Shown here one piece after another: positions 4,685 to 59,427 of a stretch of 64,000 nt of DNA; within the stretch, counting starts at the first letter, position 1; each line of letters starts with the position of its first letter. A program made the translations under genes and the position numbers. The DNA lies in NCBI GenBank assembly GCA_002269645.1, contig NIVC01000731.1, positions 395,048-459,047 of the forward strand, given 5' to 3'. The notes beneath the pieces were generated by a model. It searched no databases. It was not told where the DNA came from and worked only from the letters and a program-made list of their open reading frames with translations. The stretch is from Macrostomum lignano (lineage: Eukaryota).

Positions 4685-6752
4685 ATGCCGCTGGCGGCTC
4701 TCTGGAGTTGCCGTGGCTCCAAAAAGCGGCAGCGAAAAGAGCAGCAGCAGCAACATGGAGGCAAGGATCCCACTGCCACCTCCCGCGAGGCTGAGGTACC
4801 CGAGGATGTCGACTTGACCGAAGCTCTGGCCGACGAAGAGATCGCCGAGTGCGTGCAGACTTTCAACACATTCGACTACGACAACGACGGACGCATAAGC
4901 ATGAAGGAGCTTGGCAACATCCTGCGCTGCCTTGGATACGGCTGCTCTCGGGCAGAGCTCAAGGTGAACTATCTTGGTATATAGTTGACAATATTCCTAG
5001 AGCCGCTAGGAATACTATGGTAGTCTCTAGGTGAGACAAGTCTAAACTCTACAGAGCCTTACCTGCCGAGCGTTCCTCCAGACCACAGAATTGTCCAGAC
5101 AGAATCCTCCAGACCACAGAATTGTCCAGACAGAATCCTCCAGACCACAGAATTGTCCAGACAGAATCCTCCAGACCACAGAAATGTCCAGACAGAATCC
5201 TCCAGATCACAGAATTATCTAGACAGAATCCTCCAGACCACAGAAATGTCCAGACAGAATCCTCCAGACCACAGAATTGTCCAGACAGAATCCTCCAGAC
5301 CACAGAAATGTCCGGACAGAATCCTCCAGACCACAGAATTGTCCAGACAGAATCCTCCAGACCACAGAATTGTCCAGACAGAATCCTCCAGACCACAGAA
5401 TAGTCCAGACAGAATCCTCCAGACCACAGAATTATCCAGACAGAATCCTCCAGACCACAGAAATGTCCAGACAGAATCCTCCAGACCACAGAATCCTTCA
5501 GACCACAGAATCCTCCAGACCACAGGTCTCCCTGCTGACATTTATTACCATACAATAGTAAAATTGTGTAGCCAATGCTAACGTGTGGATATGCCCCCAC
5601 CTGTCCAATTTATGCTACATATCTGGTCAACTCTAACTTATGTACAGCCAAGTCTTTGTATAGACAAGCGTTCGGCAAACTCTTTTACGTCAAGGGCCAG
5701 ATAGAGAACGTAGCGCACGACTGCGGGGAGGCGAGAGACGAGGGAAGAGAGAAGAGAGATTGGAGAAAGGGAGGCAATGAAATAAAGGAGACGACAGAAG
5801 AAGGAGAGATGAAATAGGAGAAGGAAGACGAGAGAAGAGAGAAAGGAGCTGAGAAGAGAGACAAATCTTAAGCAGGCCGGATTGCTATTGTAAAGCTTAA
5901 AAGAACACGAGGGTCGGATAGAGAGGCTTTGTGGACCGATCCCTGGCATAGAAGAAACCATCCCTTCTCGGCTGGAAAGGCTTGGCATGGCAGAGTGCTG
6001 AAGTTCCAGTGACAGTCTGCGGCCAGCCCTGGTGACCAGGCCAGCTGGAACGGAGTTTTTGCTGTATTCTCATTGTCTGAGTTGCAGGAGATTGTAGCCG
6101 AGTGGTTAGAGCGTCGGACTCATGACTTGAAGGTCGGGGGTTCGATTCCGGATTCCACTGGAACAATTTATGTCCTTGATTAGCTAGGGTATTTGAGGCT
6201 GTGTGTGGCGACCCCCCTGACCATGGACTGAACAGCCGTACGCAGCCTTCAGATGCGCCGCGCAATAGCTGCGGCTGAGCTGTCGGTTGCACATCTGGCC
6301 CAATTCGAGCAGGTGTAATCAGTTATTATTATATTACTGGGTTGCAGAATTCACTGCAGAGGTCTCTGGATGTCTTTAAGTGGTAAGAATTCCCGCAAAA
6401 CTCGAAACTTGGGCCTCAGAGTGCAGCCCTGCTCCCGCAGGAGATGTTCGCCGGCATTGACAAGAACGGAAACGGCTTCATTGACCTGCAGGAGTTCCTC
6501 GGCCTCGTGGGCCTCGGGCAGCTTCGCCACCGGCAGCAGACGGACCGCCAGCTGGCGAAGGCCTTCCGAGTCTTCGACGCCGACCGAGACGGCTTCATTG
6601 GCCCGGCGGAGCTGCGGGCTGCCCTGCGCCGCCTGTTGAAGCCCGCTGAGGTCACCGACCGACTGGTGGACGACATGATTCGCGGCGCTGACCGTGACGG
6701 CGACGGACGCGTCTCCTTTGCCGAGTTCGTCGGCATCGTCAGCCCGCGGTAG
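4685..6752 (+). CDS. Calmodulin-like EF-hand protein, 196 aa, 2 exons
   Basis: Exons 4685-4963 and 6441-6752 joined by a phase-0 GT-AG intron. Four canonical EF loops: DYDNDGRISMKE, DKNGNGFIDLQE, DADRDGFIGPAE, DRDGDGRVSFAE. Confidence 0.92.
5078..5525 (+). repeat. 31-bp minisatellite in the calmodulin-like intron
   Basis: Unit TCCAGACAGAATCCTCCAGACCACAGAATTG, ~14 copies. Confidence 0.95.
6087..6336 (+). mobile_element. SINE family 1, copy b (internal deletion of the CORE-like body)
   Basis: TTGTAGCCGAGTGGTTAGAGCG...GGTTCGATTCC head; 3' half matches the copy at 10946-11251; TTA tail. Confidence 0.85.
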
Positions 6753-7557: not shown

Positions 7558-9045
7558 ATGCGAGCAAGTCAAGCAGTCACCGTCGCTCACATCGCGGTGC
7601 TGCTGACGATGCGCTGCTGCCTGAAGGTCATGGAGTACCAGTTCATCACACTGGCCGCAGCAAGCTCCAATGCCAGCACCGCCACCGAGGGAGTGGCGGA
7701 CTCGGCCTCAGCGCTGTCCTGGATGTACACCTGCCGCTTTTTGCTAGGCGCTCTGGGCGGCCTGCTGGCCTGCTGGATCGGCCACGTGCGCACCCTGCAG
7801 CTGGGCGGCTGCGTCCTGCTGGCATCGGCTGGCGCCATGGCCGGCGCCGTGTACACAGACCAGTGGAGCCCGGACTCTGGCGCCGCGCTGACCGCCTGCG
7901 CCCTCATGCTGGTCTACAACGGCCTGGTGATCCCCAACGTGATGTACGCAGTGCTGAGCAAGCGGACGAGGCCGCAGCGCCGCACGGTGCTCTGCGCGCT
8001 CGTCTACATGTCCTCCGCGGCCGGCCTGTTTGTGGGCATCCAGGTGCAGCACCTGCTGACCAACCCGAGCGTTGGCAAGCACTGCAGCCTCGTCTGGTTG
8101 GCCTTCGCCCTCGCCTTTGCCGCGCTCGCTATCCTGGCGCTGCCGCGGCTCGACGCAGCAGCCGCGATGGCACCGAGCTCCGGGCAGCTCGACACGGCTC
8201 CGCCGCCGCCGTTTTCGAAGCTGCTGTGCGACTGCGGGCACGTCCTGCTGCCGACTTGGAGCCGTCTGAAGCGCAGCTGCATCGTCTTCGGGACGCTGAT
8301 CCCCTTCCTGGTGGGTCTGTGCGATGACCGGTCCTCGGCCTTCAACGCGCAGCGGGCGCTGCAGCCGCTCATCGCCAACTCCAGCGGAGGTAACTCCGGA
8401 AATGACCGATTGAGCGATTCGCTGGATAGCGCGCTGCTGGCAGTCAGCCTGGTGGCCGTCAACGGAGGTCTGGTGGTCGCCGCCTGCTGCCTGCGCGGTC
8501 GCAGACGTCTCCCAGTGCAGCCGCGGCTCCTGGCGGGCATCGTCATGGAGGCGGCCCTGGAGCTGGCGCTGGCGGCAGTCAGTGGCGTTGGGCTGGCCGA
8601 CCCTGTGGCCGTGTCCGCGGTGTACACCGCTTCTACAGTGGTGGACGCGACCGCCGCCGCGCTGACGATGGTGGCCGCCTACGAGCTGATGGACAGCTTT
8701 GAGCGGGACGCCGCAATGCCACTGATTTTCGGCATCATGCTGACTGTGTGGGGTCTCGCGAACCTGGCCAGCCGCTGTATTGTCACGATCTGCCGCCGCT
8801 TGCCGCCCGACAACCCGATCCTGCAGCCGAGCGCCGGCAAGCCGCCTCTGCTGTTCGTCTACCACTCGCTGCTGCTGGCGCTGCTGCTGCTGAGCCTCGC
8901 CTTCTGGCGGCTGTTCGCCCTGCGGCTTGCCCGCTCGCTGCAGGTTATATATGAGGACGAGGGGCCGGAAGCTGCCGCCGGCCCCGTCAACGATGGCGAC
9001 GGGGAGAACCGGCCGCTGCTGAACCCGCCATCAACTGATGGGTGA
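7558..9045 (+). CDS. Intronless multi-pass MFS-like transporter (loosely POT/SLC15-like), 495 aa, copy 1
   Basis: Uninterrupted GC-rich ORF with ~11-12 hydrophobic segments and a C-terminal ENRPLL dileucine motif. The family assignment rests on topology and loose motif resemblance only. Confidence 0.8.
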   Translation: MRASQAVTVAHIAVLLTMRCCLKVMEYQFITLAAASSNASTATEGVADSASALSWMYTCRFLLGALGGLLACWIGHVRTLQLGGCVLLASAGAMAGAVYTDQWSPDSGAALTACALMLVYNGLVIPNVMYAVLSKRTRPQRRTVLCALVYMSSAAGLFVGIQVQHLLTNPSVGKHCSLVWLAFALAFAALAILALPRLDAAAAMAPSSGQLDTAPPPPFSKLLCDCGHVLLPTWSRLKRSCIVFGTLIPFLVGLCDDRSSAFNAQRALQPLIANSSGGNSGNDRLSDSLDSALLAVSLVAVNGGLVVAACCLRGRRRLPVQPRLLAGIVMEAALELALAAVSGVGLADPVAVSAVYTASTVVDATAAALTMVAAYELMDSFERDAAMPLIFGIMLTVWGLANLASRCIVTICRRLPPDNPILQPSAGKPPLLFVYHSLLLALLLLSLAFWRLFALRLARSLQVIYEDEGPEAAAGPVNDGDGENRPLLNPPSTDG

Positions 9046-9501: not shown

Positions 9502-12500
9502 TCAGATGCATTTCGCTGCATATCTCCGCGGCGTTGAGCGCTGAGCTCCTGACGATCGTCGAGACTGCGTTCGACGCCGCAACAGAAACACAAGAGCCAC
9601 CACGATGAGGATGAGCACCATGACTCCGATGCTTACAATCAGCCAGACCCACCAGTTGACTCCGGCAGAGGTGAAAACTGTTCTGGCTTCACTGCTACTC
9701 CTGCACATGGTGACCCCCGGCGGGCAGATGCACTCGAATCCCAGGTTGACGCCCGTCGCCCGGCACGACCCGCCGCTCGGGCAGCTGATGTTGAACTTGC
9801 TGCACGGGTTCACGGCAACGCAGCTCTTGCCCGCGTCTCTCTCCTGTCCTGCTGGACACTCGCAGGTCGTCTTGCCCCAGAGTCTACGGCAGACTTCCGT
9901 TGACGGACAGTCGCAGGGAGGCGTCAGGTCCACACCGTCGGGACCGACTCTGGCATCGCTGGCCAGCACTGGCGTGATGAAGCCCCCTGTCGCCTCATTG
10001 ATAGACCGATCTGCAGCATCCGTAGTTGTAGACATGTACGTGCCGGAGACGCGGATGTTCCGCAGCCAGCCTGAGCGAATTCAGTGGAGAGGTGCTAATT
10101 GGTTCAATCAAGGTAGGAAACTGACACACTAGCACAGGCACTGACTTACTGTTGGCGATCTGGGCCGTCAAGTCCAAGTTCGAGAGGTCGGCCACGGTTC
10201 GGCCCAGGTCGTGCAGCCTGTCGACCCCGTCAACTCTCAGCTTGAGCACGGCTTGCCTGGTGGCGGCAAACACGGAGTGCCACTCGCCATCGTCGACTCT
10301 GATCGGCGGAAACGCGAAGCAGCTGGACGAGTCGATGCAGAGCTGCAGCAAGCCGTCCGAAATCTGGAGTCAGGGGAGGAAAATATTTGTATAAATTGAA
10401 GTTATGAGCTTCTTGGCTTCAGTTTAAAAAATTCAGCTCACATCCAAGCTCTGACTCAGAACGGTTGAACGTGCCGAATTCTTGATAACAGCATGCAGGA
10501 CGCCAGTCGATGCACTGACTCGAGTTCGCAGTTCCAACTCAATCGATACGGAGTTTTTATCGCTTAACTGTAGCGAATTGTTCGGGTTCTCGAACCAAGT
10601 GCTTGGATTGCTTGATGCGGTGCTGATTATCAGTGGATCTGCAATTTCAATCAGTTCACTGAAGTTCAAGTGGGGGTTGTAGCCAGTGGGGGTTGTAGCC
10701 AGTGGGGGTTGTAGCCAGTGGGGGTTGTAGCCAGTGGGGGTTGTGGCCAGTGGGGGTTGTAGCCAGTGGGGGTTGTGGCCAGTGGGGGTTGTAGCCAGTG
10801 GGGGTTGTAGCCAGTGGGGGTTGTGGCCAGTGGGGGTTGTGGCCAGTGGGGGTTGTAGCCAGTGGGGGTTGTAGCCAGTGGGGGTTGTGGCCAGTGGGGG
10901 TTGTAGCCAGTGGGGGTTGTAGCCAGTGGGGGTTGTGGCCAGTGGGGGGTTGTAGCCTAGTAGTTAGAGCGTCAGACTCACGACTTGAAGGTCGGGGGTT
11001 CGATCCCCGATCCCACTGGAACAATTTGTGTCCTTGAGCAAGACGCTTAACTCTGCATTGCTTCAGTTCACCCAGCTGTAAAATGGGTGCCAGCAATAGC
11101 TGGGGTAATTGAAGGCGTGTGGTGACCCCCCGTCCTTGGACTGAACAGCCGTACGCAGCCTTCAGATGCGCCGCGCAATAGCTGCTACTGAGCTGTCGGT
11201 TGCACATCTGGCCCAATTGGGGCAGGTGTAACCAATTATATTATTATTATTGTTTACTGAAGTTCAGCTTTGGGTTATCAAGCTATGTGTGAATTCCAAA
11301 CTCGTCTTACCTTGTGTGCACTCGTTGGACTGCCGATCTTTCCTGCACTTGGCACTGGAGCCGACCGTCTCAAGCTTCTTTCGCTTCGATCCCAGGCACT
11401 GGCAGTTGCAGTCCATCGGAGCTCCTTTGCTTTTAGTCACGATCCCATAGCAGACCGACTGCGCTCCGCACACGAATGTGCCGGAGCCGCCGCAGCTGCC
11501 GCTTTGAAACTTGCAGTCGTCTTCCACTTTGGAGTCCCCGGTTGTCACGGCCCTGCTGGCCTTCGCGTCCACCAAATAGCCGTTCACGGTGACTGATTGC
11601 ACGCAGCCAGTGAGCGCCTGGCCGATCTCAAGCCAGAGGTTGGTAAAGTCCGAGACCGAACCACCAGAATTGACGCTCTTGGTCTGGCACTCGAGCGGAA
11701 TTGGATTGCTTGAGACGCCTGCGAGCTTCTTTGGGCACAGAACTGCTCGAGTCTGCAATTGGTTGCCAAGTTGGTTCAGCTCTGGTTGATAAGCAAGCGC
11801 ATGCGAGATTTATCCCAGAAACTCTCACCAGATTTGGAGTCATGAGAATGTGAAAAGTGAACCAGTTCCCTTGGTTAAGGCCTGCAGATGATACATCAAA
11901 GCTTTTTCCAAGAAGCAGACTTCCGGCCACTCTGAGTGTTGTAGTCCGGAAGATCAGCGATGCACTGAGCATTGAACTGCCTGGATTGTTGGGACTCTTC
12001 AGCGCCAGCGTCTCGTGGCCTGCTTTTTCGATTGATCCGGACAGCTCAAATGAGATTTCCAGAGACAGAGCCGAGTGCGGCAGGCCGCCAATCCAGTGGC
12101 GAGTGAAGGCCAGACCGGATGACCCGTGGCTGTAGCTTCTGACCGGGTACTCGCATCGAGGACCCCACGGGGTGTTCGGCGCTAACGGACAGATGCACCT
12201 GCAGATTGGCAGAACTTTTTTAATCAGGCTTTACTAACAGATGCAACTAGCAATCTAGTGCTTCTAATGGGGTTCTATTAGCAAGAAACGAAAAATATTT
12301 ATGAGAACCTCTTAAAACGAAAGCATTTCTCTTAAAAGCATTCCTATTTCAGTTTAATAAATCACTTTGTTCGAGTAAATTTGTTCAAAAAATTGAATAA
12401 TTTTTTTGAATAAACTAAATGTATGTTCTGACCTTTCAGTCTTGATACGCTCGTCTCTGCATTTTTCCCAGTAAGCCTTGACATCTCAGCAATTCCCCCA

Positions 12501-15171
12501 GTAAGCCTTGACATCTCAGCAATTCCCCCAGTAAGCCTTGACATCTCAGCAATTCCCCCAGTAAGCCTTGACATCTCAGCAATTCCCCCAGTAAGCCTTG
12601 ACATCTCAGCAATTCCCCAGTAAGCCTTGACATCTCAGCAATTCCCCCAGTAAGCCTTGACATCTCAGCAATTCCCCCAGTAAGCCTTGACATCTCAGCA
12701 ATTCCCCCAGTAAGCCTTGACATCTCAGCAATTCCCCCAGTAAGCCTTGACATCTCAGCAATCCCCCAGCAAGCCTTGACATCTCAGCAATTCCCCCAGT
12801 AAGCCTTGACATCTCAGCAATCCCCCAGCAAGCCTTGACATCTCAGCAATCCCCCAGCAAGCCTTGACAAAGATACTGTCCTAAAATGAAAACGGAATTT
12901 TGTAACCTTCGAACTGTCAGGCACGCTTGTTTAAATTGTCAGGACAAGGCTGACAAGGACAAGGACAAGGTTGTCAAGGCTGTGGTTTAAGCCTACATAT
13001 CAGAGACAGCAATGAGAAGGGATATACGCTATCAACTTGGAAAGCTTATCGGCACCTGCGTCAATATTCCGGCATAATGTTTTCGAGACTTCTCTTTCAA
13101 AAGCTGAAAAATAACATTCGTGCAGAAAATCTAAGAAAGCGGGCAGAACAGTCTTTAGCCACGCCTGTGCTTGAGAGCCACCTGAATTCACCTGAACCCG
13201 AAGCCAGTGAAGTTGGCATCGCAGACTCCGCCGTTCAGGCAGGTGGCCGGTCCGCACGGCTCTGCGCTCATCTGCTCGGCTGTCTGAGCCGTCCAGCTCA
13301 GCCCGAATCCCACGAAGTTCGAGTCGCTGTTGAGCTGCACCACAGCCGGATGCACCGATGGAAGCGAGCTGCTCGAAAAGCGCAGGCGACTGCGGCACAG
13401 CTGAGCGGACTCAGCGGAACACCGGTCCGGCATCACCTGGACTCCGCTACTCGCTTCAGTTTCGGTCTTCACCAGCTCGTACGCCTCCCAGAGGGCCAAG
13501 TAGGAGCTGGTGCCGGCCTTCGGTATGAGCAGGGACACCTCTGAGGTGTCGGCGGCCGGCTGCAGCTGAGAGACGAGGCGGGCCGACAGCCGACTCTTGA
13601 GTCTGGCCACCAGACTGTTGATGGGGTCTCGAGAACCTGTTTAATAATAGGCAAGCAGTGCGGGTGTTGATAACTGAGTTTGAAAATGAGCATTAGCTAT
13701 TTATACTGGCAGCTCCATACCAGCAATGAAGATGGCGCTGTCAATGACGCTCAGTGGCAGGCTGGAGACTCGCAAATTCAACTGGTGAGATACAGTTCCA
13801 GCTTTCACCTGCACCACGTGTACGCCATTCTTTAGGTCGGGAGGCCTGAGCACGAGTCTGTTGGGTGTGGAGCTCTTGTCAACGGTGAACTTGGTCGCAA
13901 CGTCGCCTGCGCCGATCACTCTGTCCATCCTGTCTACGCCCGATATTCTCAGGTAGGCGGCGCCGTACTTTCTGAAGTTGGCATCTGCGCGTTGACGGAG
14001 AGGGAGCGCAACGTTTTGATTTGTTTTAGCTGGTCGCACGGTTGCACAAAAAGTAATTAAGGGTGGGATGTGGGCACCCTGGATCAATGCTTCCGGTAAA
14101 ATCGTCCCACAACCAGCGGCGGGGCGATTCTTCCCATTGCACTGACTCCTGGGCACGCGCTGTACTGTCCCAAGTGGATCAGGCGAGGGGAGAGGGGGGA
14201 CATGCCAATGCTTTGTCCCCCCACCCGACCTCCTGACCCGTTGTGATAATCAACACTTTTTCTTCAGGGTGCAAAATATAGCGCCAAAAATAATGCCTGC
14301 GGAGCTAAAGGGAATGCCTGCGGCGCAAAAATGAGTACCTGCGGCGCCTAAATGAGTGCCTGCGGCGCAAAAATGAGTACCTGCGGCGCCTAAATGAGTG
14401 CCTGCGGCGCAAAAATGAGTACCTGCGGCGCCTAAATGAGTGCCTGCGGCGCAAAAATGAGTACCTGCGGCGCCTAAATGAGTGCCTGCGGCGCAAAAAT
14501 GAGTACCTGCGGCGCCTAAATGAGTGCCTGCGGCGCCTTAATGAGTGCCTGCGGCGCAAAAATGAGTGCCTGCGGCGCAAAAATGAGTACCTGCGGCGCC
14601 TTAATGAGTGCCTGCGGCGCAAAAATGAGTGCCTGCGGCGCCTAAATGAGTGCCTGCGGAGCTAAAAGGAGTGCCTGCGGTGCCTAAATGAGTGCCTGCG
14701 GCGCCAAATGACTTCTTGCGGCGCCAAATGACTTCTTGCGGCGCCAAAACAAGTGCCTGCGGCGCTAAAAGGAATGTCTGTGGCGCCAAAATGAGCGCTG
14801 ACCACACCGATTCTCAAAAGACGAGTAATGGACATGTAGGAATTTGGTCATGCATATGTACATGTTGAATTCTTGGCTTCGTCCCCCCCACCATAAAATC
14901 CATGGCGACGCCCCTGATGTGGATACTGCACGCAGGCGCGCTCTCAAAGACACGCTTCCACAGGGTGTACAGCAGACCTCACTTCTTAATCGTCAGGCGT
15001 GTGCACTCTCTGCGTGTGCACTCTCTGGATTGGCCCTCAAAGATGTGTACGTTCAACAGGAGGCTGGCACTCACCATCTGGTAGCAAGACTTCAACTTCA
15101 GCTTTGTCGCAGTAGGCACTGGCGAGCACCGCCAGCAGGATGGCTGCAACTGCAGGTCCGTACCGGAGCAT
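9502..15171 (-). CDS. Cadherin-derived EGF/LamG single-pass membrane protein, paralog B, 865 aa, 8 exons
   Basis: Exons 15075-15171, 13721-13984, 13192-13636, 11829-12198, 11311-11752, 10442-10638, 10150-10363, 9502-10070 (2598 nt, all GT-AG, phases consistent). Signal peptide; EC-like domain; NC-like domain; EGF (CGPATCLNGGVC...CICP...CE); LamG (GCVQSVTVNG); Cys-rich/EGF; LamG (RVDDGEWHSV); 2 EGF; TM (WWVWLIVSIGVMVLILIVVALVFLL); short tail. AATAAA on the minus strand at 9442-9447. Confidence 0.85.
10669..10945 (+). repeat. 16-bp G-rich minisatellite derived from the SINE 5' end
   Basis: Unit AGTGGGGGTTG(T)(A/G)GCC, ~17 copies, running directly into the SINE head. Confidence 0.95.
10946..11251 (+). 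mobile_element. SINE family 1, copy c (most complete), antisense in a cadherin-like intron
   Basis: GGGGTTGTAGCCTAGTAGTTAGAGCG...GGTTCGATCCCC head, CORE-like body, 3' segment and (TTA)n tail. Confidence 0.87.
12466..12869 (+). repeat. 30-bp minisatellite in cadherin-like intron 3
   Basis: Unit CCAGTAAGCCTTGACATCTCAGCAATTCCC, ~13 copies. Confidence 0.95.
14295..14790 (+). repeat. 21-bp minisatellite (42-bp dimer) in cadherin-like intron 1
   Basis: Alternating GCCTGCGGCGCAAAAATGAGT and ACCTGCGGCGCCTAAATGAGT units. Confidence 0.93.
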
Positions 15172-23123: not shown

Positions 23124-26100
23124 TTAGGCTGGCACCAGCTGGACTGTCTCTCCGTCGTTCTCGCCGTCGCTGTCCCGGCACCGGCGATGCGTTTGCCGCC
23201 AGACGAACAGCGCGCACACCGGCAGGATGCACATGGCGCACACTGTTGCCATGGCAACCGCTGCCGGACGTAGGACAGACGTCGATGCGGCTACGTCGGC
23301 GCGGAAGAAAGCGCAGTCCTGGGGGCCGTCAATGGCGACGTAGGGCCGCGGCCCCAACACCCTGGACGACGAGTTCGCCTCCGGACAAGACGACGAAGCA
23401 AAGCCGATGCGACGACCGGCTCGGTCGAATTCGACCAGGAATCCCGAGAGGAAGGTGGCACCTGGGCGGAGCAGTTAAGCGAAACTGATGATTAGAGGTA
23501 GATTAAAGGCAGGGGGCCGTGTGCGCACTTTAGGCGACATTGTCACACAACCGGCGAGAGGCATTGCTGCCCATTCCACCGGCTCCCCTGAGCAGGCACA
23601 CAAGCGCAACGATGCTTCGGTACGCAGGCACACACTCACACAGGAGTGTACAGCGGCCCTAACTTTATTTTTCGTTAGGCATTTACACTTCATTGTGGCT
23701 TAAGGGTTGACCCTCAAGGACGTTAATTGCCCGAGCAGAGTCAAGCCGAGATTTCGATTTAGCCCTAGATTAATGTGACTGCACTTAAAATCGAGTCTGG
23801 ACCGCTGGAACATCAGAGCTAGACCATTAGGTTACGCTCCCCCCCCTGATGATGAGAGGTCATGATAATGCCAATATACCCACTCCTGAAGTATTTCAAC
23901 TGTGAGCTTTGACACTCACTTTGCCTGCACTCAGACACGCAGCCCACCTCTAGCAGAAATTCAGAACCACATTCCCCGCTTCACCCTGACCTCTGGCCTT
24001 TCTATGCATCATCAGACTAAAGAAATCAAATTTCGAGTCAGAGCTTGCTAGATCAGGATTGTTGTTTCATGACAGTTGAGCTGTTTAAATTTCCAGCTTC
24101 CCTACCGAGAATAGCTCCATCGCTTGTGCTCTGAATTCCGAAGCGGAAACAGGACCCATTTCCGGCTGGAGAGCCACCGAGCACGACCGGTCGCAGGTAC
24201 TGGGTGGGGCTCAGCTCGAGGTCCACCGTCTGGTTATCCGGCGTCACCAGGCTGAAGGTGACGGATGGAAAAGCGTCGAGAAGCCTCTTGGTGGCTTCCA
24301 GTGAACCGTCGCTCGAGCACAGGAGGCCCAGGCCGTTAAAGAAGCGGTTGCCGAGCTCCGGCTGCTGCGCCCCCACCTGCTGAGCTACGCGAGCGTGCAC
24401 CCGGGCCGGCAGGCGAATGTCGCCGACGCCAGAGTGCAGGATGGCCTTGTCCATGTTGTACTCCTTGCAGTCCATGCCGAGCGAGGACTGGCCGACCTTG
24501 ATGTCGGCTATGACCACTTCATAGTACCTGAACGGCGGAGATTATTGATGGATTGTTGATATGAAAAAGGAAAACTTTCTCCAGACTGCTTATTCCGCTG
24601 AGCATTCACACGCACAAGGATACGTACGCAGATACAAGCTCAGGATGGTCAGCGGCCTTGAATTTCTAATCTTCAAAGATGTACAGTTGAATCACACAAT
24701 TGCAGAAGCCTCAAGTTATTTTGCCACAATCGAGTCTCACCAGTCCCAGCGCACGGAGGCGTACAGCATGTCGGTGCGGTTCGCCCGCCCGATCCTGATG
24801 AAGCTCCCTAAACCCGCGTCGCCTCCGCACAGCTGCAGGCAGAACGGCACGGGAGGCGATCCCGTCGACATGGCGTCGCCCAGCTGCCTCGCCAGCGTGT
24901 CGGCGAAGTTTCCGCCGCCAGCCGCTGTCCGCGCATTCGACAGCCGTTCGAAGGCCAGGCCGACAGAGGCCTGCCAGGCCCCGGCGGCGGCCTGGAAGTA
25001 GCCGGAGCTGCGCTCGGCGACGCTGAAGGCGGCGCGGACTGGTCCGGGCACAGGGCCTGGCAGGGACACGACGTCCGTGGCCAGGTGGCCCTCCCAGAAG
25101 CCGGTGGTGTAGGGGGTGCGAACCAGCTGGTGCTGCCAGACTAGCGAACTGGACGACTTGGCGTCGAACCACCGGTCAAGGCCGGGCGTCTTGGCGCCAG
25201 CCGTTACGAAGTCGCTGCTGCCTGTGTCCAACTTTGCTGTGATCTGCGAGATCAGGTTAGATGAATTTATTTCAATTTAATAGCCTACTGTCCAGTAGAC
25301 AGTATAGAATGTGGCGCAAAAGGCTTGTTCGGAGGACAAAAAAGTCTTCGTGCTGTTTTCTTGATTCAAGGGGCAGCTCGAAATTCAGAAAACGGGCCAG
25401 ATGAATCAGCATTTGAAACCAACTGGAGTTCACGGGAACTGAAGATTTGAAACTAACTGGAGTTCACAGGAACTGAAGAGTTAAAAAAAGAACTGGAGTT
25501 CACGGGAACTGAAGATTTGAAACTAACTATAGTTCACGGGAACTGAAGAGTTAAAAAAAGAACTGGAGTTCACGGGAACTGAAGATTTGAAACCAACTAT
25601 AGTTCACGGGAACTGAAGATTTAAAACCAACTATAGTTCACGGGAACTGAAGATTTTAACCAATTTGGAGTTCACGGGAACTGAAGATTTTAACCAACTG
25701 GAGTTCACGGGAACTGAAGATTTTAACCAACTGGAGTTCACGGGAACTGAAGAGTTGAAACCAACTATAGTTCACGGGAACTGAAGATTTTAACCAACTG
25801 GAGTTCACGGGAACTGAAGAGTTGAAACCAACTATAGTTCACGGGAACTGAAGATTTTAACCAATTTGGAGTTCACGGGAACTGAAGATTTAAAGCCAAC
25901 TATAGTTCACGGGAACTGAAGATTTGAAACCAACTATAGTTCACGGGAACTGAAGATTTGAAACCAACTATAGTTCACGGGAACTGAAAATTTGAAACCA
26001 ACTATAGTTCACGGGAACTGAAGATTTGAAACCAACTATAGTTCACGGGAACTGAAAATTTGAAACCAACTATAGTTCACGGGAACTGAAGATTTAAAAC

Positions 26101-26801
26101 CAACTATAGTTCACGGGAACTGAAAATTTGAAACCAACTATAGTTCACGGGAACTGAAGATTTGAAACCAACTATAGTTCACGGGAACTGAAAATTTGAA
26201 ACCAACTATAGTTCACGGGAACTGAAGATTTAAAACCAACTATAGTTCACGGGAACTGAAAATTGAAACCAACTATAGTTCACGGGAACTGAAGATTTGA
26301 AACCAACTATAGTTCACGGGAACTGAAGATTTTAAACCAACTGGTATTCACGGGAACTATAAAAATTTAACCAACTGGAGTTCACGGGAACTAAATGGAA
26401 ATTTTAACCGACTGGAGTTCACGGGAACTGAATGGAAATTTTAACCGACTGGAGTTCACGGGAACTGAATGGAAATTTTAACCGACTGGAGTTCACGGTG
26501 ACTTAAGTTTAACCGCACTGTGAGCTCCGGCACCTCTGCCCACCCAGCTCACATTCTGCCTGGGTGTACCAACGCCAAGCCGCAGGCAGTAGGCAGCCTC
26601 AGGTCGACCGTGAATGGCGCTGCCATTCACCAGCTGGAAGACACCCCTCTGTCCGAACAGCTGGACGCTGTCCACTGGCAGTCCGGATTTGGCGGGCGCC
26701 ACGAAGTTCAGGCGAGTCAGCGGCAGCTGCAGGGCCGCCGTGGCGGGGAGGCAGGCCAGAGCCGCGCAGACTGGCGGCAGCAGAGTGAGAAGAATTCCCA
26801 T
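23124..26801 (-). CDS. BACE: BACE-like (beta-secretase-type) membrane aspartic protease homolog, 503 aa, second catalytic Asp replaced by His
   Basis: Exons 26553-26801, 24741-25243, 24106-24527, 23124-23461 (1512 nt, phases consistent). Motifs LGVGTPRQ, LDTGSSDF, WYYEVVI, DCKEYNMDK, AILHSGVGDIRLP, FLVEFDRAGRRIGFA, and a C-terminal TM (AMATVCAMCILP) like BACE1/2. Confidence 0.9.
23518..23841 (-). mobile_element. SINE family 2, copy b, in BACE intron 3
   Basis: Minus-strand head GGAGCGTAACCTAATGGTC (A-box-like) and AGACTCGATTT (B-box-like); body shared with the other two copies. Confidence 0.78.
25420..26497 (+). repeat. 33-35-bp minisatellite filling BACE intron 1
   Basis: Unit AACT(GG/AT)AGTTCACGGGAACTGAAGATTTGAAACC, ~31 copies. 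Confidence 0.96.
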
Positions 26802-35210: not shown

Positions 35211-35860
35211 TAAGCTGACCTCAGTTGACCCCGAAGCCAAGGGTTTATGTTAAGATTCTCACTAACCTGACCTCAGTTGACCCCGGAGCCAAGGGCTAAT
35301 GTTAAGATTCTCGCTAAGCTGACCTCAGTTGACCCCAGAGCTAAGGGCTAATATTAAGATTCTCGCTAAGCTGACCTCAGTTGACCCCGGAGCCAAGGGT
35401 TTATGTTAAGATTCTCACTAACCTGACCTCAGTTGACCCCGGAGCCAAGGGCTAATGTTAAGATTCTCGCTAAGCTGACCTCAGTTGACCCCAGAGCTAA
35501 GGGCTAATATTAAGATTCTCGCTAAGCTGACCTCAGTTGACCCCAGAGCTAAGGGCTAATGTTAAGATTCTCGCTAAGCTGACCTCAGTTGACCCCGAAG
35601 CCAAGGGCTAATGTTAAGATTCTCACTAAGCTGACCTCAGTTGACCCCGGAGCCAAGGGCTAATATTAAGATTCTCGCTAAGCTGACCTCAGTTGACCCC
35701 GGAGCCAAGGGCTAATGTTAAGATTCTCGCTAAGCTGACCTCAGTTGACCCCAGAGCTAAGGGCTAAAATTAAGATTCTCGCTAAGCTGACCTCAGTTGA
35801 CCCCAGAGCTAAGGGCTAATATTAAGATTCTCGCTAAGCTGACCTCAGTTGACCCCGGAG
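35211..35860 (+). repeat. 52-bp minisatellite immediately downstream of the abLIM stop codon
   Basis: Unit GCTGACCTCAGTTGACCCCGGAGCCAAGGGCTAATGTTAAGATTCTCGCTAA, ~12 copies. Confidence 0.96.
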
Positions 35861-35895: not shown

Positions 35896-37799
35896 TCAAA
35901 ACAAATCAGCTTTGCGCTTGAGGTCGCTCCTGCGCCACTCGGGGAGGCGCTGGAAATGGCGCCGTTCCATTCCAAAGACGTGCACGAACTCCTCGTCGGA
36001 GAGGTGCGCCTCCAGCCGCGTCGGATCGGCGCCGCGCGGCGGCTGCTTGGCGCCGGAATGGCGGCGCAGCGCCTCGTAGTCGAACTGGCGCGGCGGAGGC
36101 GGCGCCGGGCGGTGAAGCCGCAGTGGCCCGCCGGTGGCGTGCAGGCCGAGGATGTTGGGGTAGGACAGCAGGTCCTCGTCGTCGGAGGCCGCGAGCAGCT
36201 TGGCGTAGCGGCTCTCCCTGCGGGCGGCGGCGGCCGCGGCGTCGGCTGGGCTCGGGTCCTGCGCCTGCTGGCGGCGGTCGGGCGGCGGCAGGCTGGCCGC
36301 CTTGGAGCGGACGGCCGCAGGCGAGTAGCCGCGATTGCCGACGCTGACGAATCCCTGCGGCGAAGGCACGGGCGGCCGCCTGGATGCCGTCAACTGCGGC
36401 TGCGGGCGCGGCGTCTGCTGAAACTGCTGCTGCATCCGCTGCAGCCGGCTGGCCCTGGACGGTGGCGGCGGCGGCGGGCTGACCGGATCGTCCGGGCCGA
36501 GCAGCAGGGCGGAGCCGAGGCCGCCGAGCTCCAGCCGGCCGGATTCGAACTCGCGCCGGGATCGGCTGCCGTCGCGGAAGCCGCGCCTGGACGAGGCGGC
36601 AGGCTGCTGTTGGGCGGCGGCTGCCTCATCGGCGCTGGCGGCGGCCCCCTCAGCCTCTCGTCGGCGCTGGCGCTGCCGCTCGGCCAGCAGGAGGGCGGGC
36701 AGCGGCGGGCAGGGCCAGTCGTCCCGCTCGATTGGCGCCGGCTTGGCCAGGTCGGGCCGGGAGCCGGCCGGGTAGTGGCTGAGCAGCAGCGGGTCCTCGT
36801 TCGGGTCCAACGACGGCGCCGGGCTGGGCGTCCGCGGCGTCCGGGCCGACCGCCGCCGGCCACGCTGGCTGGGCGGCGCGGCCCGATGGAGCCGGGGTGG
36901 GTGCCGGCGCCGCGCGATGACGAAGCGAGGCTGTGCGCCCGCGACCGGGGCCGGCTGCCGTCCCGGTGCATCGGCAGGTGGAAATGCTGAGGCTGCGGAC
37001 TCGGCGACCTGGTTGAAGAGGCCACGGCGGCGCAGGGGCTGGCGGGCCGGTGGTAGCGGTCGTTGGGGTGCAGCTTGCGCTCGGCCTCCTGCTCCAGGGT
37101 AAGGTAGGACCTGGCCAGCTGGGAGCCCCAGCGCGACCGCCGGCTGCTGGACGCCTCGGACGGGCAGGAAAAGCTGCCGGGGCTGTGGTGGCCGCCGCCC
37201 CTGATGCTGCTGCCATCGGCCAGGTAGTGGTAGTGGTGATAGTGCTGCGGCGGGTAGTGCTGGTGCTGAGGCAGGCTGCGCAGGCCGTGCCCGGTGCTCT
37301 CGGTGGTGTACCCGGTGTCTGTGTTGGCGTCGAAGGCGCCGTTGCCAGTGACGGCGGCGGCGGCGGCGGTGGGCGGGGCGGTGCCCACCCGCAGTCCGCC
37401 GGCCGGGTCGGTGTCGGAGGCGGCCTCGTCCTTGAGGCGCTCCCGGTGGGAGCAGGCCTTGCACAGGTAGAGCTCATTGGACCAGAGGGTGACGCGGTCG
37501 CCGGGGGTGAAGGGGGTTCGGCAGGTCTGGCAGCGGAAGCAGCTGGGGTGGAAGGTGCTGCCAAGCGCGGTGATCACCTCGCCGACAACGTAGCCGGCGC
37601 AGACGCGGCACTTGACGCCGAACAGCCGCTGATAGTCGTCCGGGCAGTAGAACTTGGCGTCCCGGACGAAGAAGCCGCCGCGTTCGAGGCCGGCTGAGCA
37701 CTCGGCACACTTGAAGCAGTCGCGGTGCATGTACTGCTCCTGGACTCGGAGCACCTCGCCTTTGCAGCGCTTCTGGCAGGCCAGGCAGTACACCTTCAT
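35896..37799 (-). CDS. ABLIM: abLIM/UNC-115-like actin-binding LIM protein (2 LIM + anchor + villin headpiece), intronless CDS with one apparent frameshift
   Basis: ORF 36390-37799 has two LIM domains ([15 protein letters not shown]...; [25 protein letters not shown]) and HFHLP. ORF 35896-37464 has [10 protein letters not shown] and a VHP ([16 protein letters not shown]...[13 protein letters not shown]). The frame switch lies between ~36830 and ~36975. Confidence 0.88.
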
Positions 37800-44282: not shown

Positions 44283-45662
44283 AAATTGCAGTGTCTGAAT
44301 TGCAGTTTTGGTGAGTCATTGATTGCAGTGTCTGAATTGCAGTTTTGGTGAGTCATTGATTGCAGTGTCTGAATTGCAGTTTTGGTGAGTCATTGATTGC
44401 AGTGTCTGAATTGCAGTTTTGGTGAGTCATTGATTGCAGTGTCTGAATTACAGTTTTGGTGAGTCATTGATTGCAGTGTCTGAATTGCAGTTTTGGTGAG
44501 TCATTGATTGCAGTGTCTGAATTGTAGTTTTGGTGAGTCATTGATTGCAGTGTCTGAATTGCAGTTTTGGCGAGTCATTGATTGCAGTGTCTGAATTACA
44601 GTTTTGGTGAGTCATTGATTGCAGTGTCTGAATTGCAGTTTTTGGCGAGTCATTGATTGCAGTGTCTGAATTGCAGTTTTGGTGAGTCATTGATTGCAGT
44701 TTTTGGCGAGTCATTGATTGCAGTGTCTGAATTGCAGTTTTTGGCGAGTTATTGATTGCAGTGTCTGAATTGCAGTTTTTGGCGAGTCATTGATTGCAGT
44801 GTCTGAATTGCAGTTTTGGTGAGTCATTGATTGCAGTGTCTGAATTGCAGTTTTGGTGAGTCATTGATTGCAGTGTCTGAATTGCAGTTTTGGTGAGTCA
44901 TTGATTGCAGTGTCTGAATTGCAGTTTTGGTGAGTCATTGATTGCAGTGTCTGAATTGCAGTTTTGGTGAGTCATTGATTGCAGTGTCTGAATTGCAGTT
45001 TTTGGTAAGTCATTGATTGCAGTGTCTGAATTGCAGTTTTGGTGAGTCATTGATTGCAGTGTCTGAATTGCAGTTTTGGTGAGTCATTGATTGCAGTGTC
45101 TGAATTGCAGTTTTTGGCGAGTCATTGATTGCAGTGTCTGAATTGCAGTTTTTGGTGAGTCATTGATTGCAGTGTCTGAATTGCAGTTTTTGGCGAGTCA
45201 TTGATTGCAGTGTCTGAATTACAGTTTTGGTGAGTCATTGATTGCAGTGTCTGAATTGCAGTTTTTGGTAAGTCATTGATTGCAGTGTCTGAATTGCAGT
45301 TTTTGGTGAGTCATTGATTGCAGTGTCTGAATTGCAGTTTTGGTGAGTCATTGATTGCAGTGTCTGAATTGCAGTTTTTGGCGAGTCATTGATTGCAGTG
45401 TCTGAATTACAGTTTTGGTGAGTCATTGATTGCAGTGTCTGAATTGCAGTTTTTGGTGAGTCATTGATTGCAGTGTCTGAATTGCAGTTTTGGTGAGTCA
45501 TTGATTGCAGTGTCTGAATTGCAGTTTTTGGCGAGTCATTGATTTCAGTGTCTGAATTGCAGTTTTTGGCGAGTCATTGATTGCAGTGTCTGAATTACAG
45601 TTTTGGTGAGTCATTGATTGCAGTGTCTGAATTGCAGTTTTTGGCGAGTCATTGATTGCAGT
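44283..45662 (+). repeat. 37-38-bp minisatellite carrying TGAGTCA, just upstream of APEX2
   Basis: Unit TTGCAGTGTCTGAATTGCAGTTTTGGTGAGTCATTGA, ~36 copies. Confidence 0.97.
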
Positions 45663-57896: not shown

Positions 57897-57916
57897 CTGA
57901 ATGTAAAGGGGCCGGC

Positions 57917-58432: not shown

Positions 58433-59427
58433 CTGTGCTGTGAGTTTGTCAGCTCGATGCGCAGCTCTCCCAGCATTTCCTTGCCCAATGAATCCTTCAG
58501 TTGGCTGTAAGATGGTTAATGTCGGTGCATTCGTTTTCCTGCCTCCCTGACAGCCAGGTGGTGTTACACTGTTACATGCTACACTGTTACATGCTACACT
58601 GTTACATGCTACACTGTTACATGCTACATGTTACACTCCTTTGAATCTGTAGTCCTCAGACGATCAGTCTGTAAATTGCTGTAAAAATTGAATCATGCAC
58701 CATGCTTTTTTAAATTGTTTTTCTCCTACAAACTGGAGTTTCCGATTTAAGTGCGCACTTTGGCGGGAGCTGCAAACTCTTTCGTCTGCGCCTCAGAGTG
58801 CGCCGGGCCAGACTGACGGTGCATTTCTTCTTCTTCTTTTGCAAAAGCAGAAATCGTATATGTGACTTCTATTAGCATCCTGTCTGGTAGTTTCTATTTA
58901 GCCGTTCCGTGGGAACTTGCAAGTTTTTATATTCCGTACTCGGTGACTTGTTTTTAATTTCTTACTGTTTTTTTACAACTCGCAGCGTTTATGCAGTTCC
59001 CTCTCTTAATACCCCAATCTAAAAATTCCCTTAAGGAAATTCCCCCAAATATTGTAACGGATTGATCTCTGCTCAGAAATTACCTCATGTATGACCATCA
59101 TAGATATTCCTGTGCATGATTCTTAGATAGAAATTCCCTCTTACGAAATTCCCTGCTAAGAATTCCCTGGTAAGAATTCTCCTTTAAAAATTCCCCTGTT
59201 GAAAATTCCTCCTTACTAAATTCCGTGGTGAGAATTCCCCCTTATTAAATTTCCTGGTGGTAATCACTTACGAAATTCCCTAGTGAGAATTCCCCCTAAT
59301 GCAATTCCCCCAAGGAGCCACTTCAGCCGCTCATCATAAATCAGCTGTCATCGCCAATTCCATTGCAGCTGACTCAGCCAGACTCTCCACCCGGAATTCG
59401 CCACCGCCGCCACCGCCCCTGACGCGG

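What the first reader, a model, noticed from the sequence alone, without database searches (positions are those of the whole stretch)
24410..24450. BACE homolog with His in place of the second catalytic Asp (histo-aspartic or pseudo-protease)
Seen: the N-lobe motif is intact (LDTGSSDF), but the C-lobe reads AILHSGVGDIRLP (CAC at 24434-24436) where BACE1 has SIVDSGTTNLRLP. The following TT is also replaced by VG. The rest of the gene is open, correctly spliced and keeps signal, TM and tail. Known: pepsin-family catalysis needs two Asp; Plasmodium HAP is an active enzyme with His replacing the N-lobe Asp. Inference: either a maintained non-catalytic binding or decoy secretase, or an animal histo-aspartic protease with His on the opposite lobe. 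Multiple adjacent changes argue against a single base-call error.
Basis: partly seen in the sequence, partly recalled or inferred. Interest (0 to 1): 0.8.

Follow-up and report, generated by a model that had tools for sequence, protein, structure and literature searches.

The report
Flatworm BACE paralog lacking second catalytic aspartate
A flatworm (Macrostomum lignano) carries an extra, transcribed and selectively maintained copy of the beta-secretase (BACE) gene. One of its two catalytic aspartates is a histidine and the substrate cleft is rebuilt, so it is most likely a membrane-anchored "dead" protease with a binding or regulatory role; it is a real but modest curiosity.

Summary
On the minus strand, a 4-exon, 503-aa gene (26801..23124) encodes a full-length BACE-type protein. 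LDTGSSDF is intact and AILHSGVGDIRLP has His282 (CAC, 24436-24434). The window is Macrostomum lignano, and the product is 100% identical to the transcript-derived GenBank protein PAA77670.1. The other genomic copies and an older assembly all keep HSGVG, so it is not a base-call error.

The same genome has a canonical paralog (DTGSS + DSGTT, 39% identical) with identical intron positions. In an NJ tree the His copy is its sister (94% bootstrap) on a long branch. It changes 14 of 62 near-invariant BACE columns, against 1 in the canonical copy. The changes cluster in the cleft (L30K, I118S, F108Y, G13A, T231V, T232G). The six cysteines, flap Tyr, TM helix and tail motif are kept.

Recent duplicates give dN/dS of about 0.27, and exons are about 7x less diverged than flanking non-coding DNA.

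Best reading is a maintained membrane-anchored pseudoprotease, since published work reports C-lobe Asp loss as inactivating in other A1 proteins. An active "reverse" histo-aspartic enzyme is not excluded (about 0.1). No orthologs from other Macrostomum species were available. Catalytic status and function are untested.

The parts
26553..26801 (-). Coding exon 1 (codons 1-83): start ATG at 26801-26799, hydrophobic signal-like N-terminus (MGILLTLLPPVCAALACLPATA), pro-region, and the start of the N-lobe (...YCLRLGVGTPRQN). Donor is GTGAGC.
   Evidence: The product is identical to PAA77670.1. The second-highest hydropathy window is at residues 1-19.
25411..26469 (.). 34-bp x 31-copy minisatellite filling most of intron 1 (intron 1 = 25244-26552). 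It is not coding. Intron 1 is longer in the g1 copies.
   Evidence: The exon coordinates in L001/L002 give a 1645-nt intron 1, against 1309 nt here.
24741..25243 (-). Coding exon 2 (codons 84-251, first two bases of the Trp251 codon): N-lobe with the catalytic motif, the flap (TPYTTGFWEG, Tyr128) and a degenerate psi-loop ASVGLA (consensus GILGLA).
25214..25228 (-). N-lobe catalytic motif D89-T-G-S-S93, intact (BACE1 D32 equivalent).
24106..24527 (-). Coding exon 3 (last base of codon 251 to first base of codon 392): C-lobe, including the substituted catalytic motif.
24422..24436 (-). C-lobe motif H282-S-G-V-G286 in place of the family-invariant D-S/T-G-T-T. His codon CAC is at 24436-24434.
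23124..23461 (-). Coding exon 4 (codons 392-503 plus stop TAA at 23126-23124): end of the C-lobe, juxtamembrane Cys, TM helix and cytosolic tail.
23199..23267 (-). Predicted transmembrane helix, residues about 457-479 (PAAVAMATVCAMCILPVCALFVW).
   Evidence: The highest Kyte-Doolittle window is at residues 460-478. AF2 predicts a helix at 448-487. It aligns with the BACE1 TM segment.
23127..23198 (-). Cytosolic tail RQTHRRCRDSDGENDGETVQLVPA. The pattern RQ-x-R-x-CR ... DGE-xxx-LVP is shared with the canonical M. lignano paralog. I read it as an acidic-cluster/[DE]xxxL[LIV]-like sorting signal (inference).
   Evidence: Pairwise alignment.

Best explanation
This is a real, transcribed, selectively maintained paralog of the Macrostomum lignano BACE-like (memapsin-type, peptidase family A1) gene, most likely a membrane-anchored pseudoprotease. 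It arose by DNA-level duplication of the flatworm BACE gene; this is shown by identical intron positions and phases. The copy then evolved 2-3 times faster than its sister (shown). It lost the C-lobe catalytic Asp (D228H in BACE1 numbering) and the Thr-Thr that follows it. It also lost several invariant cleft residues (L30K, F108Y, G117A, I118S, G13A, N37D). The fold determinants are kept: six disulfide cysteines, flap Tyr/Gly/Trp and core Gly/Pro/aromatics. So are the signal-like N-terminus, the TM helix and a tail motif shared with the canonical copy (shown). Inferred mechanism: without the C-lobe Asp it cannot run the two-Asp, water-activating chemistry. It still folds as a BACE ectodomain with an altered cleft and probably travels the same membrane route as the active paralog. 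It would then act by binding rather than cutting. It could be a decoy or protector for substrates, a partner or regulator of the active BACE, or a receptor-like protein with a new ligand. Which of these applies is not shown.
For: Identity and anatomy:
- establish the gene model and its identity. BACE1 is the best PDB sequence match at 3e-60 over the full length, and the product is 100% identical to PAA77670.1.
- The AF2 model has a confident core (pLDDT 85-96 across both lobes, pTM 0.72). Its best structural matches are BACE1 (target-normalised TM-score 0.81-0.85).

Not an error:
- HSGVG is present in all 5 cluster members, on 3 contigs and in 2 assemblies.
- At least 5 nucleotide changes separate the motif from the canonical one.

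Transcribed:
- The GenBank annotation of Mlig_3_7 is built from RNA-seq/transcriptome assemblies (PMC5730564).
- The annotated protein equals my splice model.

Maintained:
- g3 versus g1 copies show 8 synonymous and 6 nonsynonymous differences, dN/dS 0.27, with an excess of synonymous changes (p = 0.014).
- This is not distinguishable from the canonical pair (0.155, 6S/3N).
- Exon divergence is 0.93% against 6.8% in introns and downstream DNA (p = 1e-19).
- 48 of 62 near-invariant family columns are still kept, although overall identity is only 33-39%.

Duplication and acceleration:
- Intron positions and phases are identical in both paralogs.
- NJ sister grouping has 94% bootstrap.
- Tajima tests give 63-76 unique changes against 22-31 (p = 1e-3 to 1e-6).

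Catalytic impairment:
- Asp at this column is invariant in the 32 other aligned BACE-family proteins.
- In a motif scan of 313 retrieved proteins the only other exception is one chimeric model.
- 14 of 62 conserved columns are changed, against 1 in the canonical copy, and they are concentrated in cleft positions.
- Tick RmPAP, which lacks the second Asp, is inactive. It is reactivated by restoring Asp and binds haemoglobin with KD 33 nM (PMC6345952).
Against: - No enzymology exists for this protein.
- His can act as a general base at neutral pH. Tick BYC is reported to retain some activity without the second Asp.
- The N-lobe DTGSS and the flap Tyr are fully conserved. That would be unnecessary for a pure scaffold and could indicate residual or altered catalysis.
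- The dN/dS estimate rests on only 14 substitutions.
- Expression level, tissue and protein product are unknown. The gene ID was absent from the main text of the searched library and from the held supplements of three M. lignano papers.
- The decoy/regulator mechanism is an analogy, not data.
Confidence: 0.68

Rival explanations
1. It is an active atypical protease, a 'reverse' histo-aspartic enzyme. Asp89 (N-lobe) and His282 (C-lobe), possibly helped by the new Lys87 (L30K), would hydrolyse peptide bonds. It would probably work at near-neutral pH and with a new specificity set by the remodelled S1/S3 pockets.
For: The N-lobe DTGSS, flap Tyr128/Gly131/Trp133, Ser283-Gly284 and Arg289 are all conserved. 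This is more than a scaffold strictly needs. Purifying selection acts on the gene. There is precedent for activity with a single Asp: Plasmodium HAP and tick BYC.
Against: In HAP the retained residue is the C-lobe Asp215, and the review argues that this is the indispensable one. Here it is the one lost. Thr231, which in my recollection of BACE1 structures hydrogen-bonds the catalytic carboxylate, is Val. Invariant S1 hydrophobics are replaced by Lys/Ser/Tyr. This looks like release from catalytic constraint. A1 homologs lacking the C-lobe Asp that have been tested are inactive or barely active.
Confidence: 0.12
2. It is a functionless, slowly decaying duplicate (a transcribed pseudogene in the making), or the His is an assembly or consensus artefact.
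For: The branch is long, and 14 of 62 near-invariant positions are lost. M. lignano has a recently duplicated, highly redundant genome in which spare copies are common. No orthologs from other species were available to show long-term retention.
Against: All retrieved copies that cover the whole coding region, except one older-assembly model with an aberrant C-terminus (P0055), keep a complete 503-aa ORF with canonical splice sites and the same motif. dN/dS is 0.27 with an excess of synonymous changes. Exons are about 7x more conserved than adjacent non-coding DNA. All six disulfide cysteines, the TM helix and the tail motif survive about 60% sequence divergence from the sister copy. The AF2 model is confidently folded. 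Independent assemblies agree.
Confidence: 0.07
3. The His paralog is not a Macrostomum-specific duplicate. It is the M. lignano ortholog of the divergent BACE-like genes of parasitic flatworms (trematodes/monogeneans), and it lost its Asp secondarily. This concerns origin, not mechanism.
For: It shares DTGSSD...AG.K.P..DRWF with Calicophoron and Opisthorchis sequences. Relative-rate asymmetry disappears when trematodes are the outgroup (50 vs 42 and 45 vs 30). Quartet-informative sites split 4:4:0.
Against: The NJ tree groups the two M. lignano paralogs with 94% bootstrap. They alone share the C-terminal DGE-xxx-LVP tail. The four sites favouring trematodes are conservative F/Y, L/I and L/M swaps.
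Confidence: 0.2

Closest known systems
BACE1/BACE2 (memapsin 2/1), membrane-anchored peptidase family A1
   Same: It is the best sequence and structural match. It shares the type I architecture with a signal-like N-terminus, pro-region, bilobal A1 domain, six conserved cysteines, TM helix and short cytosolic tail. It falls inside the BACE clade in the tree.
   Different: The second catalytic Asp (D228/D289) is His, TT is VG, and the S1/S3 pocket residues are changed. The R-x-x-R motif present in the pro-region of the canonical flatworm copy (RHLR) reads TRLN here. It has only 3 introns.
Canonical M. lignano BACE-like gene (Mlig005505 / PAA68318.1)
   Same: It is in the same genome and has the same three intron positions and phases. 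It shares the tail motif. It is sister in the NJ tree, at 39% identity.
   Different: The canonical copy keeps DTGSS + DSGTT. It departs from the family consensus at 1 of 62 near-invariant columns, against 14 for the His copy. It is 45-48% identical to mollusc, nemertean and vertebrate BACE1, against 33-35% for the His copy.
Plasmodium histo-aspartic protease (HAP, plasmepsin III)
   Same: It is an A1-fold protein in which one catalytic Asp is naturally replaced by His.
   Different: In HAP the N-lobe Asp32 is His and the C-lobe Asp215 is kept and carries catalysis. Here the lobes are reversed. From my own knowledge, HAP also has flap substitutions, whereas here the flap Tyr is kept. There is no close phylogenetic relationship. 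HAP is a soluble food-vacuole enzyme.
A1 pseudoproteases lacking the C-lobe Asp: tick RmPAP, wheat xylanase inhibitor TAXI-I, soybean basic 7S globulin, carrot EDGP (and pregnancy-associated glycoproteins with other active-site changes)
   Same: The pepsin fold is retained. The second catalytic Asp is replaced. These proteins are maintained as binding proteins: RmPAP is inactive, becomes active again when Asp is restored, and binds haemoglobin at 33 nM.
   Different: Those are soluble secreted proteins from the cathepsin D/pepsin or plant nepenthesin-like branches, with Pro or other residues at the site. This one is a membrane-anchored BACE-type protein with His. Its inactivity is not yet tested.
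Dead paralogs of membrane sheddases (iRhoms among rhomboids)
   Same: The concept is the same: a membrane-resident, catalytically dead paralog that regulates clients of the active enzyme family (PMC3149277, abstract listed).
   Different: The protease class and fold are different. The resemblance is functional analogy only, and nothing was tested here.

Membership tests
Peptidase family A1 (pepsin fold) | Bilobal pepsin-like domain recognised by the family profile and fold | tested here: met
   Pfam PF00026 matches at E = 3e-21, covering profile positions 2-314 of 315. The AF2 model's best PDB matches have target-normalised TM-score 0.81-0.85.
Peptidase family A1 (pepsin fold) | Two catalytic Asp, one per lobe, in D-T/S-G motifs | tested here: not met
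   The N-lobe D89-T-G-S is present. The C-lobe reads H282-S-G. It is therefore a homolog by descent but not a canonical aspartic peptidase.
Peptidase family A1 (pepsin fold) | Flap tyrosine (pepsin Tyr75 / BACE1 Tyr71) | tested here: met
   Tyr128, Gly131 and Trp133 are conserved.
BACE / memapsin subfamily | Closest relatives are BACE proteins, with placement inside the BACE clade | tested here: met
   The top PDB and database hits are all BACE. The NJ tree places it inside the clade.
BACE / memapsin subfamily | C-terminal transmembrane anchor and short cytosolic tail | tested here: met
   There is a hydropathy peak at residues 460-478 and an AF2 helix at 448-487. The alignment to BACE1 runs through the TM segment.
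BACE / memapsin subfamily | Six cysteines of the three BACE-type disulfides | tested here: met
   C222, C271, C321, C377, C417 and C441 align with BACE1 C216, C278, C330, C380, C420 and C443. The disulfide pairing itself is not testable here.
BACE / memapsin subfamily | Aspartic endopeptidase (sheddase) activity | not testable with these tools
   This needs recombinant protein. The sequence argues against canonical activity.
Histo-aspartic protease (Plasmodium HAP type) | His replaces the N-lobe Asp32 while the C-lobe Asp215 is retained | tested here: not met
   Here the N-lobe Asp is retained and the C-lobe Asp is the one replaced.
Histo-aspartic protease (Plasmodium HAP type) | Demonstrated proteolytic activity with the His in place | not testable with these tools
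A1 pseudoproteases (RmPAP, TAXI-I, EDGP, basic 7S globulin, some PAGs) | Pepsin fold with a catalytic Asp naturally substituted | tested here: met
A1 pseudoproteases (RmPAP, TAXI-I, EDGP, basic 7S globulin, some PAGs) | Gene maintained by selection rather than decaying | tested here: met
   dN/dS is 0.27 between recent copies. Exons are far more conserved than non-coding DNA. The ORF is intact in all three Mlig_3_7 genomic copies. Power is limited (14 substitutions).
A1 pseudoproteases (RmPAP, TAXI-I, EDGP, basic 7S globulin, some PAGs) | Absence of proteolytic activity and gain or retention of a binding function | not testable with these tools
   This is inferred from the cleft remodelling and from precedent only.

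The most novel reading that the evidence does not exclude
The protein is a working endopeptidase that uses an Asp(N-lobe)/His(C-lobe) pair. It would be a mirror image of Plasmodium HAP and the first such animal, membrane-anchored enzyme. It would contradict the view that the C-lobe Asp is the indispensable catalytic residue of the pepsin fold.
Probability: 0.1. Interest if true: 0.75.

Novelty: new variant of a known kind. Interest (0 to 1): 0.42.

Why it matters
Catalytically substituted pepsin-fold proteins are known, but those I found are soluble (tick RmPAP, plant inhibitors, placental PAGs). I found no description of a BACE-type, membrane-anchored one. Among 313 retrieved BACE-family proteins this was the only credible loss of a catalytic Asp.

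If it is a dead sheddase that co-traffics with the active paralog, it is a natural experiment on non-catalytic roles and regulation of beta-secretases. It sits in a genetically tractable flatworm where RNAi and transgenesis are available.

If it is active, it would revise which Asp of the A1 dyad is dispensable. Either way the scope is one lineage-specific paralog, so the general impact is moderate.

Tried and rejected
1. Orthologs in related species. The word-indexed search, the exhaustive representative search and a control search with the canonical paralog returned nothing from any other Macrostomum or macrostomorph species. The age and conservation of the D->H change could not be tested. 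This is a sampling gap, not evidence of absence.
2. Expression details. The gene ID Mlig022958 was absent from the main text of the searched library and from the held supplements of three M. lignano papers.
3. A second natural example. Oyster model P0091 (NSGTT) looked like an independent Asp loss. It is a chimeric or fragmentary gene model (half an Asp domain plus 7tm hits) and was rejected as evidence.
4. Timing of the duplication relative to parasitic flatworms. Quartet-informative sites split 4:4:0. I rely on the NJ tree (94%) and the shared tail, with a stated caveat. No ML software was available.
5. Active-site geometry. The structure tool returns confidence values but no coordinates, so the His282-Asp89-Lys87 distances could not be measured.
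6. Single-base error, retrogene and bacterial/contaminant origins were considered and rejected.
7. No paper describing a BACE-clade pseudoprotease turned up in the literature searches.
Full report
**Observation**

The reported interval lies on the coding (minus) strand of a spliced gene.
- The reverse complement of 24200-24529 reads RYYEVVIADIKVGQSSLGMDCKEYNMDKAILHSGVGDIRLPARV....
- The + strand GTG at 24434-24436 is the His codon CAC.
- Reading the junctions gave a four-exon model: 26801-26553, 25243-24741, 24527-24106 and 23461-23124. All introns are GT..AG. The frame is open for 503 aa and ends in TAA.
- The N-lobe motif is KLDTGSSDF (D89). The C-lobe motif is AILHSGVGDIRLP (H282).
- The protein matches Pfam Asp (PF00026, 3e-21). 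It matches human BACE1 chains at 3e-60 from the pro-region through the transmembrane segment.

**Source and independent confirmation**

- The product is 100% identical to GenBank PAA77670.1, 'hypothetical protein BOX15_Mlig022958g3' of the free-living flatworm Macrostomum lignano.
- Its 90% cluster holds four more sequences: the g1 copy on two other contigs, and three UniProt models from another assembly. All have HSGVG.
- I extracted the g1 coding sequence from both contigs. The splice sites are the same, the ORF is intact, and CAC is retained.
- Relative to the canonical paralog, the five-codon motif differs by at least five nucleotide substitutions.
- The GenBank annotation of this assembly was generated from genome-guided RNA-seq transcript assemblies. 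Novel transcripts below RPKM 0.5 that did not overlap the de novo transcriptome mappings were discarded (PMC5730564). An annotated model identical to my splice model therefore implies a spliced transcript.

I could not inspect reads. I also found no expression tables mentioning the gene.

**Family context**

- The same genome encodes a canonical BACE-like protein (PAA68318.1, Mlig005505) with ILIDTGSSNF and TIVDSGTTDIRLP. It is 39% identical to the His copy.
- Both genes have three introns at identical positions and phases: after ...PxQxxN (phase 0), inside the Trp codon of W|YYEV (phase 2), and inside the Gly codon of AILG|A (phase 1). The duplication was therefore DNA-based, not retroposition.
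- I built an NJ tree of 34 BACE-family sequences. In it the two M. lignano paralogs are sisters (94% bootstrap), and the His copy sits on a branch more than twice as long.
- Tajima relative-rate tests with non-flatworm outgroups give 63-76 unique changes in the His copy against 22-31 in the canonical copy (p = 1e-3 to 1e-6).
- With trematode outgroups the asymmetry vanishes, and quartet-informative sites split 4:4:0. An older duplication, shared with parasitic flatworms, cannot be firmly excluded.
- The DGE-xxx-LVP tail shared only by the two M. lignano proteins argues for the local duplication.

**How unusual is the His?**

- An exhaustive HMMER scan of 1.84 billion representatives and two word-indexed searches gave 313 BACE-family sequences.
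- Wherever the C-lobe motif could be located, the catalytic residue is Asp, with two exceptions. One is the M. lignano Mlig022958 cluster (His). The other is an oyster model with Asn, which is a chimeric or fragmentary prediction.
- No sequence from another Macrostomum species was present, even for the canonical paralog. The age of the substitution within the genus is unknown.

**What else changed, and what did not**

- Sixty-two alignment columns are at least 90% conserved in the 32 other BACE-family proteins. The His copy departs at 14 of them. The canonical copy departs at 1.
- In BACE1 mature numbering the changes are G13A, L30K, N37D, A39V, I102A, F108Y, G117A, I118S, V227L, D228H, T231V, T232G, W262F and E339S.
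- Less strictly conserved cleft positions also differ: G11E, V69T, Q73T, I110Q and R128N.
- From my knowledge of BACE1 inhibitor complexes, L30, F108, I110, W115 and I118 line S1/S3. The 10s loop (residues 9-14) and T231/T232 shape S3/S2. T231 hydrogen-bonds the catalytic carboxylate.
- The catalytic centre and the substrate pockets are thus remodelled together.
- Kept are D32-T-G-S-S, the flap Y71/G74/W76, S229-G230, R235, all six disulfide cysteines and most structural Gly/Pro/aromatic positions (48 of 62).
- An AlphaFold2 model is confident across both lobes (block pLDDT 85-96, pTM 0.72). It predicts a C-terminal helix at 448-487.
- The model's best PDB matches are BACE1 structures (target-normalised TM-score 0.81-0.85).
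- Hydropathy peaks at residues 460-478 (TM) and 1-19 (signal-like).
- The R-H-L-R motif in the canonical copy's pro-region aligns to T-R-L-N in the His copy. This hints, by inference only, that furin-type pro-peptide removal is no longer required.

**Selection**

- The window copy (g3) and the g1 copies differ at 14 of 1509 coding positions: 8 synonymous and 6 nonsynonymous.
- This gives dS 0.020, dN 0.0054 and dN/dS 0.27. The binomial p for excess synonymous change is 0.014.
- The canonical gene's equivalent pair gives dS 0.016 and dN/dS 0.155 (6S/3N). The two are not distinguishable.
- Coding divergence (0.93%) is about seven-fold lower than that of introns 2-3 and 1 kb downstream (6.8%, Fisher p = 1e-19). 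Indel-rich non-coding alignments may inflate the latter figure.
- None of the six amino-acid differences touches a catalytic motif.
- Together with the retained fold-determining columns, this argues against a neutrally decaying duplicate. The numbers are small.

**Mechanism**

- Shown: a real, spliced, duplicated-and-retained BACE-type gene whose C-lobe catalytic Asp is His and whose cleft is remodelled.
- Established knowledge: a structural survey of acid proteases states that HAP stays active because Asp215 is still present. [quoted passage not shown] It concludes that the C-lobe Asp is the required one (PMC11313796).
- Tick RmPAP lacks the second Asp and is inactive. It regains activity when Asp is restored, and it binds haemoglobin with nanomolar affinity (PMC6345952). 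The same paper notes that tick BYC keeps some activity without that Asp, so inactivity is likely but not guaranteed.
- Inference: the M. lignano protein is a membrane-anchored pseudoprotease. It keeps a BACE-shaped ectodomain with a changed cleft and a tail motif shared with the active paralog. It therefore probably shares the active paralog's trafficking route. It would act by binding, as a substrate decoy or protector, a partner or regulator of the active BACE, or a receptor for a new ligand.
- I put about 0.68 on 'maintained, catalytically impaired paralog'. Confidence in any particular binding role is much lower.
- The main rival, an active Asp/His enzyme mirroring HAP, gets about 0.1. A functionless copy or artefact gets about 0.07.

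**Comparison and novelty**

- By descent it is a member of the BACE/memapsin branch of family A1. It fails the defining two-Asp criterion of an aspartic peptidase.
- It is not a HAP-type enzyme. The substituted lobe is the opposite one, the flap is canonical, and there is no phylogenetic link.
- It works most like the known A1 pseudoproteases. It differs from all of those I found in being a type I membrane protein of the BACE clade and in carrying His.
- No paper describing a BACE-clade pseudoprotease turned up in the literature searches.
- I therefore rate it a new variant of a known kind. Interest is moderate (0.42). It is a credible, testable curiosity in a tractable model flatworm, but it is lineage-restricted and functionally uncharacterised.

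Noticed in passing
window 25411-26469 (intron 1 of the BACE-like gene); also 1540-2448, 5074-5525, 12467-12869, 35211-35860, 44285-45662, 46731-48226, 49667-50755, 51379-52266, 55208-57040 and others: The window is packed with minisatellites (periods 15-52 bp, 10-55 copies) and microsatellites. One 34-bp x 31 array fills most of intron 1. Intron 1 is 1309 nt here and 1645 nt in the g1 copies, so array length differs between copies.
   Followed up: partly
window 36390-37799 (-), GC about 0.71: A long ORF begins with two LIM domains (Pfam PF00412, 1.5e-21). It lies upstream of the BACE-like gene on the same strand. The g1 locus L001 has a LIM + villin-headpiece gene in the same relative position, so synteny is kept between the duplicated regions.
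   Followed up: partly
window 46399-48411 (+) and 57196-57900 (+): An ORF segment at 57196-57900 carries a GRF zinc finger (PF06839). An upstream ORF at 46399-48411 starts with sequence that looks AP-endonuclease-like to my eye and then runs through the 28-bp minisatellite. Together they resemble an APEX2-type gene interrupted by very large repeat arrays. Only the GRF domain was confirmed.
   Followed up: partly
window 59299-60084 (+): This ORF carries a nuclear-receptor C4 zinc-finger DNA-binding domain (PF00105, 4.8e-29). It is presumably one exon of a nuclear receptor gene.
   Followed up: partly
window 7558-9045 (+) and 63129-63917 (-): A 495-aa hydrophobic, apparently multi-pass membrane ORF has no Pfam match. 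A near-identical partial copy lies in inverted orientation at the far end of the window, so this is an inverted segmental duplication within 64 kb.
   Followed up: no
window 10946-11015 (+): Rfam reports a tRNA-like match (37 bits, gathering threshold 29) directly abutting a 16-bp tandem array (10669-10957). ARAGORN finds no tRNA in the window. It may be a degenerate or repeat-associated tRNA-derived element.
   Followed up: partly
P0061 (Corticium candelabrum XP_062499743.1): A sponge 'beta-secretase 1-like' protein of 856 aa contains two complete BACE-type A1 domains in tandem, both with DTGSS and DSGT motifs, followed by a single TM segment. This could be a fused gene model or a real two-domain BACE.
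   Followed up: no
P0091 (Saccostrea echinata XP_061184875.1): An oyster 'beta-secretase 1-like' model has NSGTT instead of DSGTT. It contains only the C-terminal half of the Asp domain joined to 7TM-receptor-like sequence, so it is probably a chimeric or pseudogenic prediction and not a second BACE pseudoprotease.
   Followed up: partly
P0055 (UniProt A0A1I8I215, older M. lignano assembly): This model of the same gene mixes g1- and g3-type residues. It has a 5-aa deletion (VGAQQ) and a frameshifted C-terminus. It could be a third distinct copy or an assembly chimera. It still has HSGVG.
   Followed up: no
L003 and L004 (canonical paralog loci): Both copies of the canonical BACE-like gene are preceded by a SPARC/FSTL1-like EF-hand gene (faint or weak Pfam hits). 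The canonical locus is therefore also duplicated with its neighbour.
   Followed up: no
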